The notes beneath the pieces are model-generated. The model ran no database searches and had not been told where the DNA came from. It saw nothing but the letters and a program-made list of their open reading frames with translations. A stretch of DNA of 64,000 nucleotides from assembly GCA_025603075.1 (NCBI GenBank), contig MU626283.1, forward strand, positions 1 through 64,000, in the 5' to 3' direction. Positions within the stretch are counted from its first letter, which is position 1; each line of letters begins with the position of its first letter. A program made the translations under genes and the position numbers. Origin of the DNA: Neoconidiobolus thromboides FSU 785 (Eukaryota; Fungi; Entomophthoromycota). Positions 26,866 through 33,653 of the stretch are shown here, piece after piece.

Positions 26866-28647
26866 AAAGTATAATATGAGCAATAATATTAATTATGAAA
26901 AAATAATTCATTTAATAAGTATAATTACATTAATTATAATGTATATTATTTTATATAAAAAACAATCCCCCTTATTTTATTTTGGCTATATATTATTTCC
27001 AATTTATTTTTGGAATCAAACTATTATTAATAGAAATAGTTTAATTACTGCAGTTAAAAATATGAAAATTAGTAAATTGATTCAAGTAGTAATTATTACT
27101 TTAGTTTGTTTGGAATTAATGGTAAGTCAATAGTTGATTATTATATACAATAATAATTAAAATGTTATAAAGTATTATGAATTTTTAATAAATTTTGTTT
27201 TTAATTAGGTATTTTCTTATTTTAAAAGAAGTATATTATCCTTTGGGTTTTTATTATTAGCTATTTTACCATGGTTAAAAATCAGTCAAACTCAAGTTCA
27301 AAACAGATTATTGTCAATTTGGAGTATTGTTTGTTTAATGAATGCTGTTTTCCCTACATTTTCGGTTGAAAAAGTAGAAGATATTAATTTAGTGTAAGTT
27401 TTAACTTTTAATTTTCAAGTTAAAAAATTAATTAATAAATACTTTATTAATTAGTGTTTTTGGTGGATTTATTATTATATTAATTGGATTGATTGGTGTT
27501 TATTTTGCTAAAGAATTAATACCTTCAGCAGTCATTAGTTTTGAAAGTGATAATAAAAGAAAGCAAAGTGATGAGAGTATTAAAAACGAAATATTAGAAG
27601 TTCGTAAAAGATTATTAATACAAGTAAGATTAGTTTATTATTTTGTTACAAAAATAATTTAATTAATATATATTTGTACTTATATTTATATTTATTAGAT
27701 ATTGTTTGTAATTATATCAATAATACAAATGTATTTAAGTAGTAATCAATTAAAATTAAGACATCGAAATGAAAATTTAGTATTAGCTAAATTTGAAGAT
27801 GTAGGAGATATTGTACCACCTTATTTACATTATTTAGGTTGGTTAATATTATCCATTTCAATTATTTATTTAATTTTAATTAATAACATAAAACAACATT
27901 ATTTATTAAAATTAATATCAATTTTTTTGGCATTTGCACCAAGTTATATTATTTTATCAATATCGTAAGTTATTTCTTTTTTTTCTGTTTTTTAAAGACT
28001 AAATTAATTATTATTTTAGATATGAAATTCTGTTTTATTCTACATTGTTTGGATTATTGTTTACTTGGATTATTATGGAACAAATCAACTTTAAAAATAA
28101 GCAATTAGTGATAATCAATAATAATAGCAATAACAATAATAATAATAACAATAATAATAATATAAGTATAAATCAATTATTTCAAAAATTAAGTTTAAAC
28201 GAATTAAAACAAAGTTTATTGTTTTTATTTTTAATCAATGTATCTTTCTTTAGTTGTGGTAATATGGCATCAATCTCTTCCTTTTCACTTGAAGCAGTTT
28301 ATCGATTAACGGTTAAATTCAATCCCTTCTTGATGGGCACATTATTAATCTTCAAGATATTAATTCCCTTCTTTTTATTATCTTCTACTATAACAATTAT
28401 TAATCAATTGTTGAATTTAGAACCATTTTCTATCTTCTTATTAAGTTTATCATTAACTGATATAATGACTTTAAATTTTTTCTTTTTAGTTAAAGATGAA
28501 GGTTCTTGGTTGGAAATTGGTACTTCCATTTCTCATTTTATTATTGCTAGTTCTTTTGTTTTGTTTATTACACTTCTTTACTTTTTGGCTTACTTACTTA
28601 CAAAATGGACAATGTTACCTAAGTATAAAAGTTTAAAGATGAAATAA
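24882..28647 (+). CDS. MCD4: GPI ethanolamine phosphate transferase 1 (PIG-N), multi-exon
   Basis: [88 protein letters not shown] and a C-terminal [15 protein letters not shown]. Confidence 0.97.
25632..25708 (+). repeat. (AAT)n microsatellite of about 25 units in an MCD4 intron
   Basis: Uninterrupted ATA/AAT run read directly. Confidence 0.95.
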
Positions 28648-28761: not shown

Positions 28762-30089
28762 TTATTCTAATTTTTTCATTAAATAATCTATTTTATCATT
28801 TAAATTTGGTATTTCTTTCAGTAAACAATTTAATTGATTTTGACTTTCATTATAACTTTGAGAATATTTTATAAGTTGATTTTCTAATTGATTTTTTTTC
28901 AATTGTAATTTTTCAATTTCTTGATATAACTGTTGATTATTATCTACTTCATTTATATTATCATCAGTGACAAGTTCATTATTCCTTTTTAATAACTTAA
29001 TTTTCAATTCTTCTTTTTCTTTTTTTTGTTGTTTCAATAATTCTAATTTATTTTCATAATGTTTTTTCTGTATCTCCAACTGAATTTCCAATAATTCCAC
29101 TTCATCCTCAGAATATTTCCCCTTCTTTCCCATTTGTAATTCCAAATCAATTTCCTTTTCTTTACTACTAGTAGTTACTCTACCATCATTAATCAATTTT
29201 TCATAAATAAAATCCAATAATTGATTATCTTTTAATCTTAATCCGATTGAATGTTGATAATCTTTACAATGGCTACTTGTATGTTGAAAACAACCTTTAA
29301 ACCCACAAATTAAGCATAAATATCGTTCTAAATTATCCGTACATGAATGACATGAATCTTTTTTTTCATTTTTAAATTCTTCTATCACTTGGAAATGCGA
29401 ATGACGACATAATGGACACCTAATGAGTATTAATTATTAATTTCTTTTTAATTACTCTAAATATATAAATAAAATTCCTTACTTAGTTTCGTTCCAATTG
29501 AGCATACAGTTGGCATGAAATATGTGACCACATGATAAAGTTAATGTTGAAAACTTACTATCTAATATCAGTCTATCTAAACATACAGCACAATGAGATA
29601 GTTCCATTGAGTTATCTGAAAATAAAATTAAATTTTTACTAATACTTAAACTGTTGTTAAATACTTGTTGTTGATAACATAATGTGTTAATTTTTTTAAA
29701 TGAGTTGGAATTATTCTATTTGAGAAATTAATAAGTTAATTAATATATTTAAGTTTTAAATTAAACTAATTTACCTTTAAATAAAATTCTATATTCGCTT
29801 CTTTTTTTAATTCAATGATACAATGAAATTTTTTATCTTGATTTTTTTTATCCAAAATAAATAGCATCTCATTAACATTTTCCAACTCAATATTACTCTT
29901 TTGTAATGTTTCACTGACATTATAATATGTCGGGATATCTTTCCATAATAATAGATTAGAAAATGGTGAAATTAATTGTTGGTTGGGTGATAAAATGTCT
30001 TCCTTTCTTGAATTATTATATTTATAAAATTGATATTCGGATGTAGATTCATTAAAAGAGCCATAGAATATACTGTCTTTATAATTCAT
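28762..30089 (-). CDS. BRAP2/Etp1-like paralog A: divergent BRAP2 domain, intact RING-H2, degenerate ZnF-UBP, coiled coil (3 exons)
   Basis: Spliced: ...EFYLK|NNSNSF...CAVCLDRL...CGHIFHANCMLNWNETK|CPLCRH...CHSC...YLCLICGFKGCFQHTSSHCKDYQH..., followed by an E/K/Q-rich coil. Confidence 0.85.
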
Positions 30090-30298
30090 TTTTTTATCAA
30101 TAATTTAAAAACGTTTAAAATTATAACGAGTGAAATCTATTTAATATTTTATTCCATTAAATGAACCTGAATTTTGTTAGTAATTTAACTTTCAAAAAAT
30201 GCCATGTTTTTTAACAACCAATCAATTTCATCAGAGTGATAGTTAATTTCAATATAAGCTTTTAAAATAATCACATCACTTTTATTTCCATTAAAATA

Positions 30299-31940
30299 AT
30301 GCATACTATTCAATTCCAATTATCAACGGACTATAAACAAAGGATAAAATCAAACATATTATCTCACTCGTCCAAATCAACTTTACAAAAAGAACTTCCA
30401 ACACTATTAGAAACTATAACAAATTGGAAAACAATCCACCCTTCACTAGATATTCCTGATTTACCTTCCTTTTTAAATTTACCATTTAATTTATATAATA
30501 AGTATTTCAAATTAAACTTAGGTGGATGCTATCTATTTGATTTCAATTTAAGTCATAATATAACTACATCTACAACCCCTAACCTTAGTCTTAGTGGTAT
30601 TAATTTTAGTTTTTCACCAGAAAAATCAAAAACATTTATAACAGTAAAAAATTATAATTTAGGCTCCAATACTAGTTTTCATTTATATAAAGAAAGGAGT
30701 GATATATTATTAAATAAATTAGATACAAAAGAGGAATTATTACTTGGTAATGATAATGATAATTTGGTTTCTATTGTTGGTATACCCAAAGAATATACTT
30801 TATTAAAGTTATTGAATTTTTTTGATGCTTATTTAGCAAGTAAAGAATTAAAGAAGATTAATTTATTGATTAGTTATAAAGAAGATGAAATGAAATTGAT
30901 ATTTAATCTAAATTTTATCAATTTTAATACTGCATTAGAGTTCTATAACCATTTCAATGGTCAACCTTTTGAAAACAATCAAGTAAGTTTTATATTCATT
31001 TATTATCATAATTTTATATTTACACTTTATATTTTATATTTAGTCATCTTATTGTTTTGTTTTGTTTACTCAGTTTAATTTATCCTTATCTACTCAATCT
31101 TCCCAATCTTCTCCTAAATATCATTGGGAATTACCTATGTGTATAAATTGTTTATTAAGATTAGATATTCAAGTCACCGGTTTAAGAGATATACCCAATA
31201 ATTTAAATAACATTCCTGAAATTCAACATAATTTTCATTGTAAAACATGTAGAATAATCAATCAAGATTTACAATTAAATGAAGGCTGTAATACATGTGG
31301 ATTTCAGCAAGATTCATGGATTTGTATGTTATGTTCTCATATTGGTTGTGGTCGATATTATCAAGCTCATGCTAGAAAACATTTCGAAGATACTAAACAT
31401 ACTTTGGCTTTAGAATTAAAAACAAATAGAATTTGGGATTATATTAGTGATAAATATCAACATCGAATTGACGATAAAGTGGATATTAATGAGAGTAGAA
31501 AAAGTAAGATAGACAGCGTGAAGATGGAGGAAATACAAAGATTAAGTGAAGAATTATATCGACAAGGTATTGAATTTGAAAAAGAAATAAGTCAGTTGGA
31601 AAAAGATTGTAATGAGTTAGATATTGAAAATCAAGATATTGAAATGGAATATCAATTAAGAGTTAAAGAGAAGAACAAAACAATCCAAAAAAAAGTGAAA
31701 AAAGAAAAAAAATTAATATTCAAAAAAAAAGAATTGGAAGAAAATATTAATGAACAAAGTTTATTATTAAAAAATATAATTCAAAATAATTTATCAATAC
31801 AAAAAGAATTAAAACAAGCAGAATTAAATTATAATGAATTAAAAGATCAATTTCAAGATTTGTCTTTTTTTTTAAATTCGAAATTAAAGATTCAAAATGA
31901 TCTTATTGAAGCTGATAATGGCACTTTAATTTTAAAGTAA
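30299..31940 (+). CDS. BRAP2/Etp1-like paralog B: BRAP2 domain, degenerate RING, intact ZnF-UBP, coiled coil (2 exons)
   Basis: IVGIPKEYT...ALEFYNHFNGQPFENNQ|SSYCFVLF; ELPMCINCLLRLD...QHNFHCKTCR; WICMLCSHIGCGRYYQAHARKHF...RIWDYISDKYQHR. Confidence 0.88.
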
Positions 31941-31995
31941 TAAAAAGGCAATATTTATTTCGAGTTTAAATTTTTATAATTTTACTTGATTCAAA

Positions 31996-33653
<1,658 letters not shown>

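What the first reader, a model, noticed from the sequence alone, without database searches (positions are those of the whole stretch)
28762..31940. Head-to-head BRAP2/Etp1 paralogs with complementary domain decay: candidate split, heteromeric E3 ligase
Seen in the sequence: two genes, each with the BRAP2-RING-ZnF-UBP-coiled-coil layout, are transcribed divergently with only 209 bp between start codons (30089 and 30299). The minus copy keeps all eight RING-H2 ligands, but its ZnF-UBP lacks the GRY and WDY..D motifs. The plus copy keeps a textbook ZnF-UBP and BRAP2 domain, but its RING is broken. Both keep long C-terminal coiled coils, and their protein sequences are highly diverged, so the duplication is old. 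Established: budding yeast (ETP1) and humans (BRAP/IMP) each carry one such gene, while Arabidopsis BRIZ1 and BRIZ2 form a heteromeric E3 through their coiled coils. Inference: after an inverted duplication, the E2-recruiting and ubiquitin-binding functions were divided between two co-expressed subunits that share one promoter and must heterodimerise. I do not know of this arrangement being described in fungi.
Basis: partly seen in the sequence, partly recalled or inferred. Interest (0 to 1): 0.82.

Follow-up and report, generated by a model that had tools for sequence, protein, structure and literature searches.

The report
Divergent BRAP2 paralog pair, complementary decay
In the insect-associated fungus Neoconidiobolus thromboides, two back-to-back, co-expressed copies of the BRAP2/Etp1 ubiquitin-ligase gene have each kept what the other lost (one the E2-recruiting RING, the other the ubiquitin-binding finger), so they may work only as a pair, as the plant BRIZ1/BRIZ2 ligase does; that pairing is not yet shown.

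Summary
The window is Neoconidiobolus thromboides FSU 785, contig MU626283.1.

**Gene A** (minus strand, 401 aa):
- It has all eight RING-H2 ligands.
- Its ZnF-UBP keeps the zinc ligands but has lost the ubiquitin-tail pocket. It is the worst UBP of 267 family members scored.

**Gene B** (plus strand, 526 aa, P0001):
- It has a normal BRAP2 domain and a textbook ZnF-UBP.
- Its RING lacks C3 and C6.

**Shared features:**
- The start codons are 209 bp apart.
- RNA contigs from three runs show both genes spliced, at similar depth in the two runs where depth can be compared.
- Variants among close relatives are mostly synonymous in both genes.
- AlphaFold2 predicts one C-terminal helix of 114 (A) and 130 (B) residues.

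**New here:**
- B is the orthologue of the Massospora and Entomophthora BRAP2 genes. Their RINGs are also dead, so B's RING decay is probably old.
- No A-like gene lies within 8 kb of those orthologues.
- RING-dead, UBP-intact BRAP2 relatives recur in ciliates, Amoebozoa and red algae.
- A is unique in the sample and has the longest branch in the tree.

A heteromeric "split" E3 is the best single reading (about 45%) but is untested. I found no A orthologues outside the genus, and I could not rule out a third copy in the genome.

Verdict: a new variant of a known kind, of moderate interest.

The parts
28762..30089 (-). Gene A: 401-aa BRAP2-family paralog with three exons (30089-29775, 29715-29483, 29419-28762)
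   Evidence: Spliced RNA contigs in runs X1, X2 and X3 remove 29716-29774 and 29420-29482. The NCBI model is also 401 aa. Translation.
29659..29975 (-). A: weak BRAP2-like domain (residues about 39-124)
   Evidence: Pfam BRAP2 scores 15 bits, below the 22-bit cut-off. A family HMM gives 15.2 bits against a family median of 118.8.
29407..29592 (-). A: intact RING-H2 (residues 147-187), split by the 63-nt intron just before C7
   Evidence: zf-RING_2 scores 34.5 bits. The ligand columns read CCCHHCCC. By inspection of alignment A2, the BRAP2-type spacing, the Trp after C6, the Pro after C7 and the Arg after C8 are all kept.
29185..29352 (-). A: ZnF-UBP-like domain (residues 206-261) that keeps the zinc ligands but has lost the ubiquitin-tail pocket
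   Evidence: zf-UBP scores 29.3 bits. The pocket reads Y--LFE where the family has WRYWYD. Its family-HMM score of 29.3 is the lowest of 267; the family minimum is 49.5. The AlphaFold2 core has pLDDT 80-93. The best PDB sequence match is the yeast Ubp8 ZnF-UBP, E 0.009.
28765..29112 (-). A: C-terminal long helix or coiled coil (residues about 286-401). It ends before the family's C-terminal '...FFL.AQ.KI...G.L' motif is complete.
   Evidence: AlphaFold2 predicts a helix at 104-217 of the exon-3 piece, pLDDT over 90. A heptad pattern runs over more than 100 residues. C-terminal comparison.
30090..30298 (.). Shared 209-bp intergenic region, a putative bidirectional promoter with a CCAAT box at 30218
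   Evidence: RNA depth is zero or near zero across 30112-30235: 0 in X1 and X2, 1.2 in X3. A's contigs reach 30119 and B's start at 30298. Motif scan.
30299..31940 (+). Gene B: 526-aa BRAP2-family paralog (P0001) with two exons (30299-30982, 31044-31940)
   Evidence: The library protein P0001 is 100% identical to the query over residues 229-526 and is 526 aa long, as in my two-exon model. The spliced contig removes 30983-31043. NCBI names it 'zf-UBP-domain-containing protein [Neoconidiobolus thromboides FSU 785]'.
30764..31073 (+). B: BRAP2 domain (residues about 156-238), interrupted by the 61-nt intron
   Evidence: Pfam BRAP2 scores 29.1 bits, above the 22-bit cut-off. The intron sits at the same position as in the Massospora gene.
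31140..31250 (+). B: degenerate RING remnant (residues 261-297). C1, C2, H4, H5, C7 and C8 are kept. C3 is Ile, and C6 and the Trp helix are deleted.
   Evidence: No Pfam RING hit at E <= 1. Alignments A2. The ligand string reads CCNHH-CC. The family RING HMM gives 29.8 bits against a median of 85.3.
31287..31469 (+). B: intact ZnF-UBP (residues 310-370)
   Evidence: zf-UBP scores 70 bits. The pocket reads WRYWYD. It aligns to the USP49 and HDAC6 ZnF-UBP structures, E 2e-13 and 1.5e-10. AlphaFold2 pLDDT is 88-94.
31509..31904 (+). B: C-terminal long helix or coiled coil (residues about 384-515), followed by the conserved C-terminal motif
   Evidence: AlphaFold2 predicts a helix at 385-514, pLDDT over 90. 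The C-terminal 'QDLSFFL...GTLIL' motif aligns with Massospora and Entomophthora.

Best explanation
**Shown**
The locus holds two old, selectively maintained paralogs of the BRAP2/Etp1/BRIZ family. They are transcribed divergently from a shared region of about 200 bp.

- Gene B is the lineage's orthologue of the Entomophthorales BRAP2 gene. It keeps the N-terminal region, the BRAP2 domain, a ubiquitin-tail-binding ZnF-UBP and the coiled coil. Its RING can no longer form the cross-brace.
- Gene A is a shorter, very fast-evolving copy. It keeps a complete BRAP2-type RING-H2 with the usual E2-contact residues and a long helix. Its ZnF-UBP is reduced to a zinc scaffold without the ubiquitin pocket.

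**Inferred**
- The two long helices pair, as the BRIZ1/BRIZ2 interaction domain does in Arabidopsis.
- The complex would then have one E2-recruiting RING, from A.
- It would also have one free-ubiquitin or substrate-binding module, from B.
- The shared promoter would keep the two subunits at matched levels.
For: - **Domain complementarity, measured against 266 other family members.** UBP scores are A 29.3 (lowest of all) and B 96.4, with a median of 111.7. RING scores are A 46.4 with all eight ligands and B 29.8 with C3 and C6 missing.
- **Expression.** Both genes are spliced and present at similar contig depth in runs X2 and X3, roughly 7-20 for A and 5-33 for B. Coverage is zero or near zero only in the middle of the 209-bp spacer.
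- **Selection.** Among the listed variants in close relatives, A has 16 synonymous and 6 non-synonymous sites, and B has 8 and 6. Both reading frames and all splice sites are intact.
- **Age of B's state.** B's RING-dead, UBP-intact state has lasted since before the split from Massospora and Entomophthora, so it is a working state and not decay in progress.
- **Paralogy.** A's RING has BRAP2-type spacing, and A joins the B clade in the mixture-model tree with support 86/88.
- **Helices.** Both have one helix of similar length, 114 and 130 residues, with continuous heptads.
- **Precedent.** BRIZ1 and BRIZ2 preferentially form heteromers and act as one E3 (PMC8008127).
Against: - No interaction has been tested. 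AlphaFold-multimer was not available.
- The Massospora and Entomophthora orthologues of B also have dead RINGs, and no A-like gene lies within 8 kb upstream of them.
- RING-dead BRAP2 relatives occur in ciliates, Planoprotostelium and Rhodosorus. A RING-less BRAP2 protein may therefore work without a RING partner.
- A is so diverged (branch 4.3 substitutions per site, 24% identity to B) that its helix may no longer match B's.
- A crude g-e' charge count gave no clear preference for A-B pairing.
- I could not find A orthologues outside close relatives, and I could not search the whole genome for a third copy.
- In BRIZ both RINGs are needed; here one is broken.
Confidence: 0.45

Rival explanations
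1. The two proteins work independently.
- B acts as a non-catalytic ubiquitin-binding scaffold or retention factor, as its RING-dead orthologues in Entomophthorales must do if they have no partner.
- A has taken on a new role as a stand-alone, probably homodimeric, RING E3. Its ZnF-UBP serves only as a structural or protein-binding zinc module, like the Ubp8 finger in the SAGA deubiquitinase module.
- The head-to-head arrangement is just a leftover of a local inverted duplication.
For: - RING-dead orthologues in Massospora and Entomophthora have no adjacent A-like gene.
- RING-dead BRAP2 relatives recur in unrelated lineages.
- A's ZnF-UBP matches the yeast Ubp8 finger best, E 0.009. That this finger does not bind the ubiquitin tail is from my own knowledge.
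- A has a very long branch, a weak BRAP2 domain and a truncated C-terminus.
Against: - The exact complementarity of what each copy kept.
- Similar expression from one short spacer.
- Paralogs of coiled-coil oligomers usually keep cross-interaction (general knowledge), and BRIZ1/BRIZ2 do so.
Confidence: 0.33
2. Gene A is a dispensable duplicate on its way to loss. Only its RING still looks intact, and B alone does the family's job.
For: - A has the lowest UBP score of the family, a sub-threshold BRAP2 domain, the longest branch in the tree and a shortened C-terminus.
- No orthologue was found outside close relatives.
Against: - The open frame and both introns are kept and spliced in three runs, and also in a relative about 5% diverged.
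- Listed variants are 16 synonymous to 6 non-synonymous.
- All eight RING ligands, the E2-contact residues and 8 of 9 UBP zinc ligands are kept.
- Its depth is similar to B's.
Confidence: 0.07
3. A third, canonical BRAP2/Etp1 gene elsewhere in the genome carries the ancestral function, and both A and B are accessory, specialised copies.
For: - The genome could not be searched as a whole.
- The word-indexed protein searches were clearly not exhaustive. Even A itself was never retrieved.
Against: - A Massospora-based search that recovered more than 100 canonical family members returned only P0001 from N. thromboides.
- No note on another BRAP2 gene exists among 485 scanned windows of this genome. 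Both points are weak negatives.
Confidence: 0.12

Closest known systems
Arabidopsis BRIZ1/BRIZ2 heteromeric E3 ligase (Hsia and Callis 2010; PMC8008127)
   Same: [quoted passage not shown]
- PMC8008127 reports that they preferentially form heteromers through an interaction domain and act as a single E3.
- In the BRIZ1-like proteins sampled here, the RING departs from RING-H2: H5 is Gln and Pfam finds no RING.
   Different: - In BRIZ the wild-type RING of each subunit is required, and the BRIZ1-like sequences sampled here keep a full UBP pocket. Here B lacks two RING ligands and A lacks the ubiquitin pocket.
- The fungal genes are head to head on one short spacer.
- The fungal duplication is separate from the plant one: A and B group with Entomophthorales and not with plants.
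Human BRAP/IMP and yeast Etp1 (single-copy BRAP2-family proteins)
   Same: The domain order is the same, and so are the RING spacing, the ZnF-UBP pocket (in B), and the post-UBP helix motif and C-terminal motif. BRAP2 is described as an E3 ligase, and both BRAP2 and Etp1 as ubiquitin binders (PMC9041338).
   Different: In those proteins one polypeptide carries both the intact RING and the intact UBP. Here the two are on separate polypeptides.
BRAP2 genes of Massospora cicadina (P0017) and Entomophthora muscae (P0161)
   Same: - They are orthologues of gene B.
- They align end to end, share the intron position in the BRAP2 domain, and form a clade with B in both trees (FastTree support 94; careful tree 89/69).
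- Pfam finds only BRAP2 and zf-UBP. The RING keeps only C1, C2, C7 and C8.
   Different: - No A-like gene lies within 8 kb upstream.
- The details of the decay differ. B keeps H4 and H5 but lost the Trp segment, while these two keep the Trp but lost H4 and H5. Part of the decay therefore went on separately in each lineage.
RING E3 heterodimers with one inactive RING (BRCA1-BARD1, RING1B-BMI1, MDM2-MDMX), from general knowledge
   Same: This is a lead only. Paralogous RING proteins pair so that one RING recruits the E2 and the other subunit supplies other functions.
   Different: Those pairs dimerise through or beside two folded RINGs. Here one RING is not expected to fold as a RING, and pairing would be through long helices. 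Nothing about this was tested here.
Yeast Ubp8 ZnF-UBP (SAGA deubiquitinase module, PDB 3MHS and others)
   Same: It is the best solved-structure sequence match to A's finger, and it has the same 'CGF.GC[WF].H' stretch in place of 'GCGRY'.
   Different: The match is weak (E 0.009) and the protein is otherwise unrelated. That the Ubp8 finger is a scaffold and not a ubiquitin-tail binder is from my own knowledge and was not tested here.

Membership tests
BRAP2/Etp1/BRIZ family | BRAP2 domain (PF07576) N-terminal to the RING | tested here: met
   B scores 29.1 bits, above the 22-bit cut-off. A scores only 15 bits (sub-threshold) and 15.2 bits against a family HMM, so the feature is met for B and inconclusive for A.
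BRAP2/Etp1/BRIZ family | RING-H2 with eight zinc ligands and BRAP2-type spacing | tested here: inconclusive
   A meets it: ligand string CCCHHCCC and zf-RING_2 at 34.5 bits. B does not: ligand string CCNHH-CC and no Pfam RING hit. The result is split between the two genes.
BRAP2/Etp1/BRIZ family | ZnF-UBP (PF02148) directly after the RING | tested here: met
   B scores 70 bits and A 29.3 bits, against a 22.7-bit cut-off.
BRAP2/Etp1/BRIZ family | Ubiquitin C-terminal tail pocket in the ZnF-UBP (W, R, Y, W, Y, D columns) | tested here: inconclusive
   B has WRYWYD, as do 251 of the 268 aligned sequences. A has Y--LFE, unique in the set. The feature is met for B and not met for A.
BRAP2/Etp1/BRIZ family | Long C-terminal coiled coil | tested here: met
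   AlphaFold2 predicts single helices of 130 residues (B) and 114 residues (A) with pLDDT over 90. Heptads are continuous.
BRAP2/Etp1/BRIZ family | E3 ligase activity and ubiquitin binding | not testable with these tools
   Needs autoubiquitination and ubiquitin pull-down assays.
BRIZ-type heteromeric E3 | Two family paralogs in one genome, both expressed | tested here: met
BRIZ-type heteromeric E3 | Preferential heteromer formation through the interaction (coiled-coil) domain | not testable with these tools
   No multimer prediction was available. A crude g-e' charge count was uninformative.
BRIZ-type heteromeric E3 | Wild-type RING of each subunit required (PMC8008127) | tested here: not met
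   B's RING lacks C3 and C6. If this pair is a heteromer, it is a different variant from BRIZ.
BRIZ-type heteromeric E3 | Same origin as the plant BRIZ1/BRIZ2 duplication | tested here: not met
   A and B group with the Entomophthorales proteins (86/88) and apart from the plant BRIZ1-like clade. The long branches call for caution.

The most novel reading that the evidence does not exclude
A and B form an obligate 'split' BRAP2 ligase. After a duplication in early Entomophthoromycotina, the E2-recruiting RING survived only in A, and the ubiquitin-tail finger and the BRAP2 domain at full strength survived only in B. The bidirectional promoter keeps the subunit ratio fixed.

This would be the first BRIZ-like heteromer in fungi. 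It would also be the first in the family where each subunit has lost the other's function, a clean natural case of domain-level subfunctionalisation locking paralogs into a heteromer.
Probability: 0.4. Interest if true: 0.65.

Novelty: new variant of a known kind. Interest (0 to 1): 0.5.

Why it matters
How BRAP2/IMP/Etp1 proteins combine their RING, ubiquitin finger and coiled coil is still poorly understood. Etp1's E3 activity has not even been shown (PMC9041338).

- **A natural separation-of-function pair.** If the two proteins pair, one subunit has only the RING and the other only the ubiquitin pocket. Each activity could then be assayed alone and together without engineering mutants.
- **An example of paralogs becoming mutually dependent.** It would show duplicated oligomeric proteins locked together by complementary loss, with a shared promoter as the likely means of keeping their levels matched.
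- **A result that stands either way.** Entomophthoromycotina BRAP2 orthologues, and relatives in several protist lineages, have dead RINGs but perfect ubiquitin fingers. This suggests that the family's conserved core job is ubiquitin binding and not ligation.

Tried and rejected
- **A 30-nt intron in gene A (29616-29645).** I rejected it. It is in frame, RNA contigs read through it, and the NCBI model has 401 aa.
- **The acceptor at 31073 for gene B.** I rejected it. RNA and P0001 use 31043.
- **Scan of genome contigs with B.** Nothing was found, because that collection holds only bacteria and archaea.
- **Profile of P0001 plus the three exon pieces of A, meant to fetch A's database entry.** Only P0001 came back; low-complexity words filled the candidate list. 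I had no reference for the spliced A protein and did not type it, so A could not be used as a full-length query in any database tool.
- **Search with P0001 residues 150-385.** Only P0001 itself was returned, so no close relative of B shares words with it.
- **Two metagenome scans.** The first used a B-type alignment and the second a 'CGRY...HA[RK]KH' DNA pattern. No confirmed relative came from the first. The second gave nine BRAP2-like loci, none with a separate A-like neighbour.
- **P0062.** It is AT-rich and shares 'ELPxCINCL' with B, so it looked like a close relative with an intact RING. It carries what looks, by my reading of the contig, like a 34-nt intron, and it falls elsewhere in the tree, so it is not an orthologue.
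- **P0003.** It looked B-like but comes from a compact rumen-ciliate-type contig.
- **Timing of the duplication.** The tree places A outside (B, Massospora, Entomophthora), but the AU test does not reject A and B as sisters (p 0.25). The timing stays open.
- **Heptad g-e' charge counts.** A-A scored +2, B-B scored -6, and the best A-B offset scored +1. The method is too crude to weigh.
- **Naming 30 library representatives.** No further early-diverging fungus turned up besides Massospora.
Full report
**Source and gene models**

The window is the first 64 kb of contig MU626283.1 of Neoconidiobolus thromboides FSU 785 (GCA_025603075.1), an entomophthoralean-grade fungus with about 22% G+C in this region.

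Gene A lies on the minus strand.
- Its exons are 30089-29775, 29715-29483 and 29419-28762, giving 401 aa.
- Gene B lies on the plus strand, with exons 30299-30982 and 31044-31940, giving 526 aa. This is library protein P0001.

Assembled RNA contigs from three public runs (X1, X2, X3) carry exactly these splice junctions.
- For A they skip 59 nt and 63 nt with CT..AC ends, which is GT..AG on the minus strand.
- For B they skip 61 nt with GT..AG ends.
- A run from a relative about 5% diverged (X6) splices A's second intron too.
- The NCBI models have the same lengths.
- I first drew a 30-nt intron in A. It is not an intron: it is in frame and is read through.

The start codons are at 30089 and 30299, with 209 bp between them.
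- RNA coverage is zero or near zero across 30112-30235 (0 in X1 and X2, 1.2 in X3).
- The spacer contains one CCAAT box at 30218.

**Check of the domain claims**

The Pfam scan gives:

| Domain | Gene B | Gene A |
|---|---|---|
| BRAP2 (cut-off 22) | 29.1 bits | 15 bits, sub-threshold |
| RING | no family at E <= 1 | zf-RING_2 34.5 bits (exon-2 part alone) |
| zf-UBP (cut-off 22.7) | 70 bits | 29.3 bits |

| Columns | Gene A | Gene B | Family |
|---|---|---|---|
| RING ligands | CCCHHCCC | CCNHH-CC | CCCHHCCC in 204 |
| Ubiquitin-tail pocket | Y--LFE (unique) | WRYWYD | WRYWYD in 251 of 268 |

In B, C3 is replaced and C6 with the following Trp helix is deleted. By my reading of the local alignment, A keeps 8 of the 9 UBP zinc ligands scored.

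I built HMMs for each domain from the other 266 members.

| Domain | Family median | A | B | Massospora | Entomophthora |
|---|---|---|---|---|---|
| UBP (family minimum 49.5) | 111.7 | 29.3 (lowest of all) | 96.4 | 99.4 | 99.3 |
| RING | 85.3 | 46.4 | 29.8 | 29.1 | 27.9 |

Further structural evidence:
- B's finger aligns to the solved USP49 and HDAC6 ZnF-UBP domains with the pocket residues in place.
- A's finger matches the yeast Ubp8 finger best, though weakly at E 0.009. Both have 'GC[FW].H' where the family has 'GCGRY'.
- AlphaFold2 folds A's finger core with pLDDT 80-93. It gives one long helix in each protein: 114 residues in A and 130 in B.
- A and B are 24% identical over 191 residues.

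The one caveat is that A's BRAP2 domain is sub-threshold.

**Are both genes alive?**

- In runs X2 and X3 the contig depth over A is about 7-20 and over B about 5-33, which is the same order.
- In X1, B's contig is merged with the highly expressed neighbour, so its depth says nothing about B.
- I translated the variants that the read-laying table listed. The table shows only its best-supported variants.
- For A, 16 distinct sites are synonymous and 6 non-synonymous. For B the counts are 8 and 6.
- About three quarters of random changes would be non-synonymous, so both genes look constrained. The sample is small and incomplete.

**Relatives**

An exhaustive HMMER scan with B's second exon found B itself and then nothing better than 30-38% identity. 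A word-indexed search with B's domains found only B.

The closest named fungal relatives are a Massospora cicadina protein (P0017) and an Entomophthora muscae protein (P0161). Four lines of evidence make them orthologues of B:
- They align with B from the N-terminal region to the C-terminal 'FFL...GTL' motif.
- The Massospora gene has an intron at the same place in the BRAP2 domain as B: 'QPFDVFE|EAICY' against 'QPFENNQ|SSYCF'.
- They form a clade with B in both trees, with FastTree support 94 and careful-tree support 89/69.
- Pfam sees only BRAP2 and zf-UBP in them. Their RINGs keep only C1, C2, C7 and C8.

The relaxation of B's RING therefore probably predates the split between Neoconidiobolus and the Entomophthorales. 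The details differ, however. B keeps 'HNFH' but lost the Trp segment, while the other two kept the Trp and lost the His pair. Part of the decay therefore ran separately in each lineage.

No A-like sequence lies within 8 kb upstream of either orthologue. Those genomes are very large, so this is only weak evidence that they lack a partner.

RING-dead but UBP-perfect relatives also exist in rumen ciliates, Blepharisma, Planoprotostelium, Rhodosorus and other protists. Almost all keep C1, C2, C7 and C8.

**Where does A come from?**

- Its RING has the BRAP2 spacing and flanking residues: 'EL..C.VCL.R', a Trp four residues after C6, and 'CP.CR'. Its post-UBP helix carries the family motif. It is therefore a true family member and not a shuffled RING.
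- In a 40-sequence mixture-model tree, A is sister to (B, (Massospora, Entomophthora)) with support 86/88.
- A has the longest branch in that tree, 4.3 substitutions per site, against 2.0 for B and a median of 0.59.
- An AU test does not reject A and B as direct sisters (p 0.25).
- A still has the RING that the B lineage lost. The simplest history is a duplication before that loss, in an early entomophthoromycotine ancestor. A later duplication with parallel RING loss is not excluded.
- A's introns are not at B's position.

**How it most likely works**

What is shown is two constrained, co-expressed paralogs, one with a usable RING only and the other with a usable ubiquitin finger and BRAP2 domain only. 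Both have a long helix of similar length.

What is inferred is that the helices pair. This rests on the BRIZ1/BRIZ2 precedent, in which two paralogs of this family preferentially form heteromers and act as one E3 (PMC8008127). It also rests on the general behaviour of duplicated oligomers. The complex would then regain the full BRAP2 set of activities.

I put this at about 45%.

The main rival, at about a third, is that the two now work apart.
- B would be a non-catalytic ubiquitin-binding scaffold, as its RING-dead orthologues may be.
- A would be a stand-alone RING ligase with a purely structural finger.

Loss in progress for A is unlikely given the data above. A third, canonical copy elsewhere could not be excluded.

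**Comparison with what is known**

The pair belongs to the BRAP2/Etp1/BRIZ family. It differs from BRIZ1/BRIZ2 in three ways:
- In BRIZ both RINGs are required, whereas here one is broken.
- One finger has lost its pocket.
- The genes share a promoter.

It also arose separately from the plant duplication. Full-text searches found no description of such a pair in fungi.

I class it as a new variant of a known kind and rate it of moderate interest. It is a neat, testable case of complementary domain loss, but the key step, pairing, is still inference.

Noticed in passing
window 31542-33653: A class-III alcohol dehydrogenase gene (ADH_N plus ADH_zinc_N, 376 aa, minus strand, about 31996-33653) converges on gene B. 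By the NCBI gene ends, only 55 bp separate it from B's stop codon. Its very abundant RNA contigs (depth about 900-3000) are fused with B's 3' end. In runs X2 and X3 they reach back to 31542 and 31741, so they are antisense to the last 200-400 nt of B's coding sequence.
   Followed up: partly
L004:9443-11308 (same in L005 and L006): On a compact, intron-poor contig that also turns up in a cow-rumen sample and looks ciliate-like, a RING-dead BRAP2-like gene (P0003, 435 aa) sits head to head with a ubiquitin-conjugating enzyme (UQ_con) gene, only 18 bp away.
   Followed up: no
alignment of 268 family proteins (/scratch/all.aln; P0003, P0012, P0036, P0058, P0118, P0122, P0124, P0125, P0167): BRAP2-family proteins with a dead RING but a perfect ubiquitin finger recur in ciliates, Planoprotostelium, Rhodosorus and unnamed protists. 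Nearly all keep the outer cysteine pairs C1, C2, C7 and C8, which hints at a single residual zinc site.
   Followed up: partly
P0179, P0187, P0194, P0205, P0207 (Mucorales); P0215, P0231 (grasses, BRIZ1-like): In the Mucorales BRAP2 proteins and the plant BRIZ1-like proteins the fifth RING ligand (His) is replaced by Gln or Arg, giving CCCH[QR]CCC. Pfam then reports no RING in them. A Cys follows directly and might take over as ligand.
   Followed up: partly
window 30218-30222: A single CCAAT box lies in the middle of the 209-bp spacer between the two start codons. It is the only CCAAT or TATAAA-type motif found there.
   Followed up: no
window 28045-28647: An upstream plus-strand open reading frame holds a run of 13 asparagines within a multi-pass membrane-like sequence.
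   Followed up: no
L016:1-1332: A soil-sample contig with 27% G+C encodes a canonical BRAP2 protein (P0062) whose coding sequence seems to be interrupted by an intron of only 34 nt. The organism is therefore some tiny-intron protist and not a relative of this fungus.
   Followed up: partly
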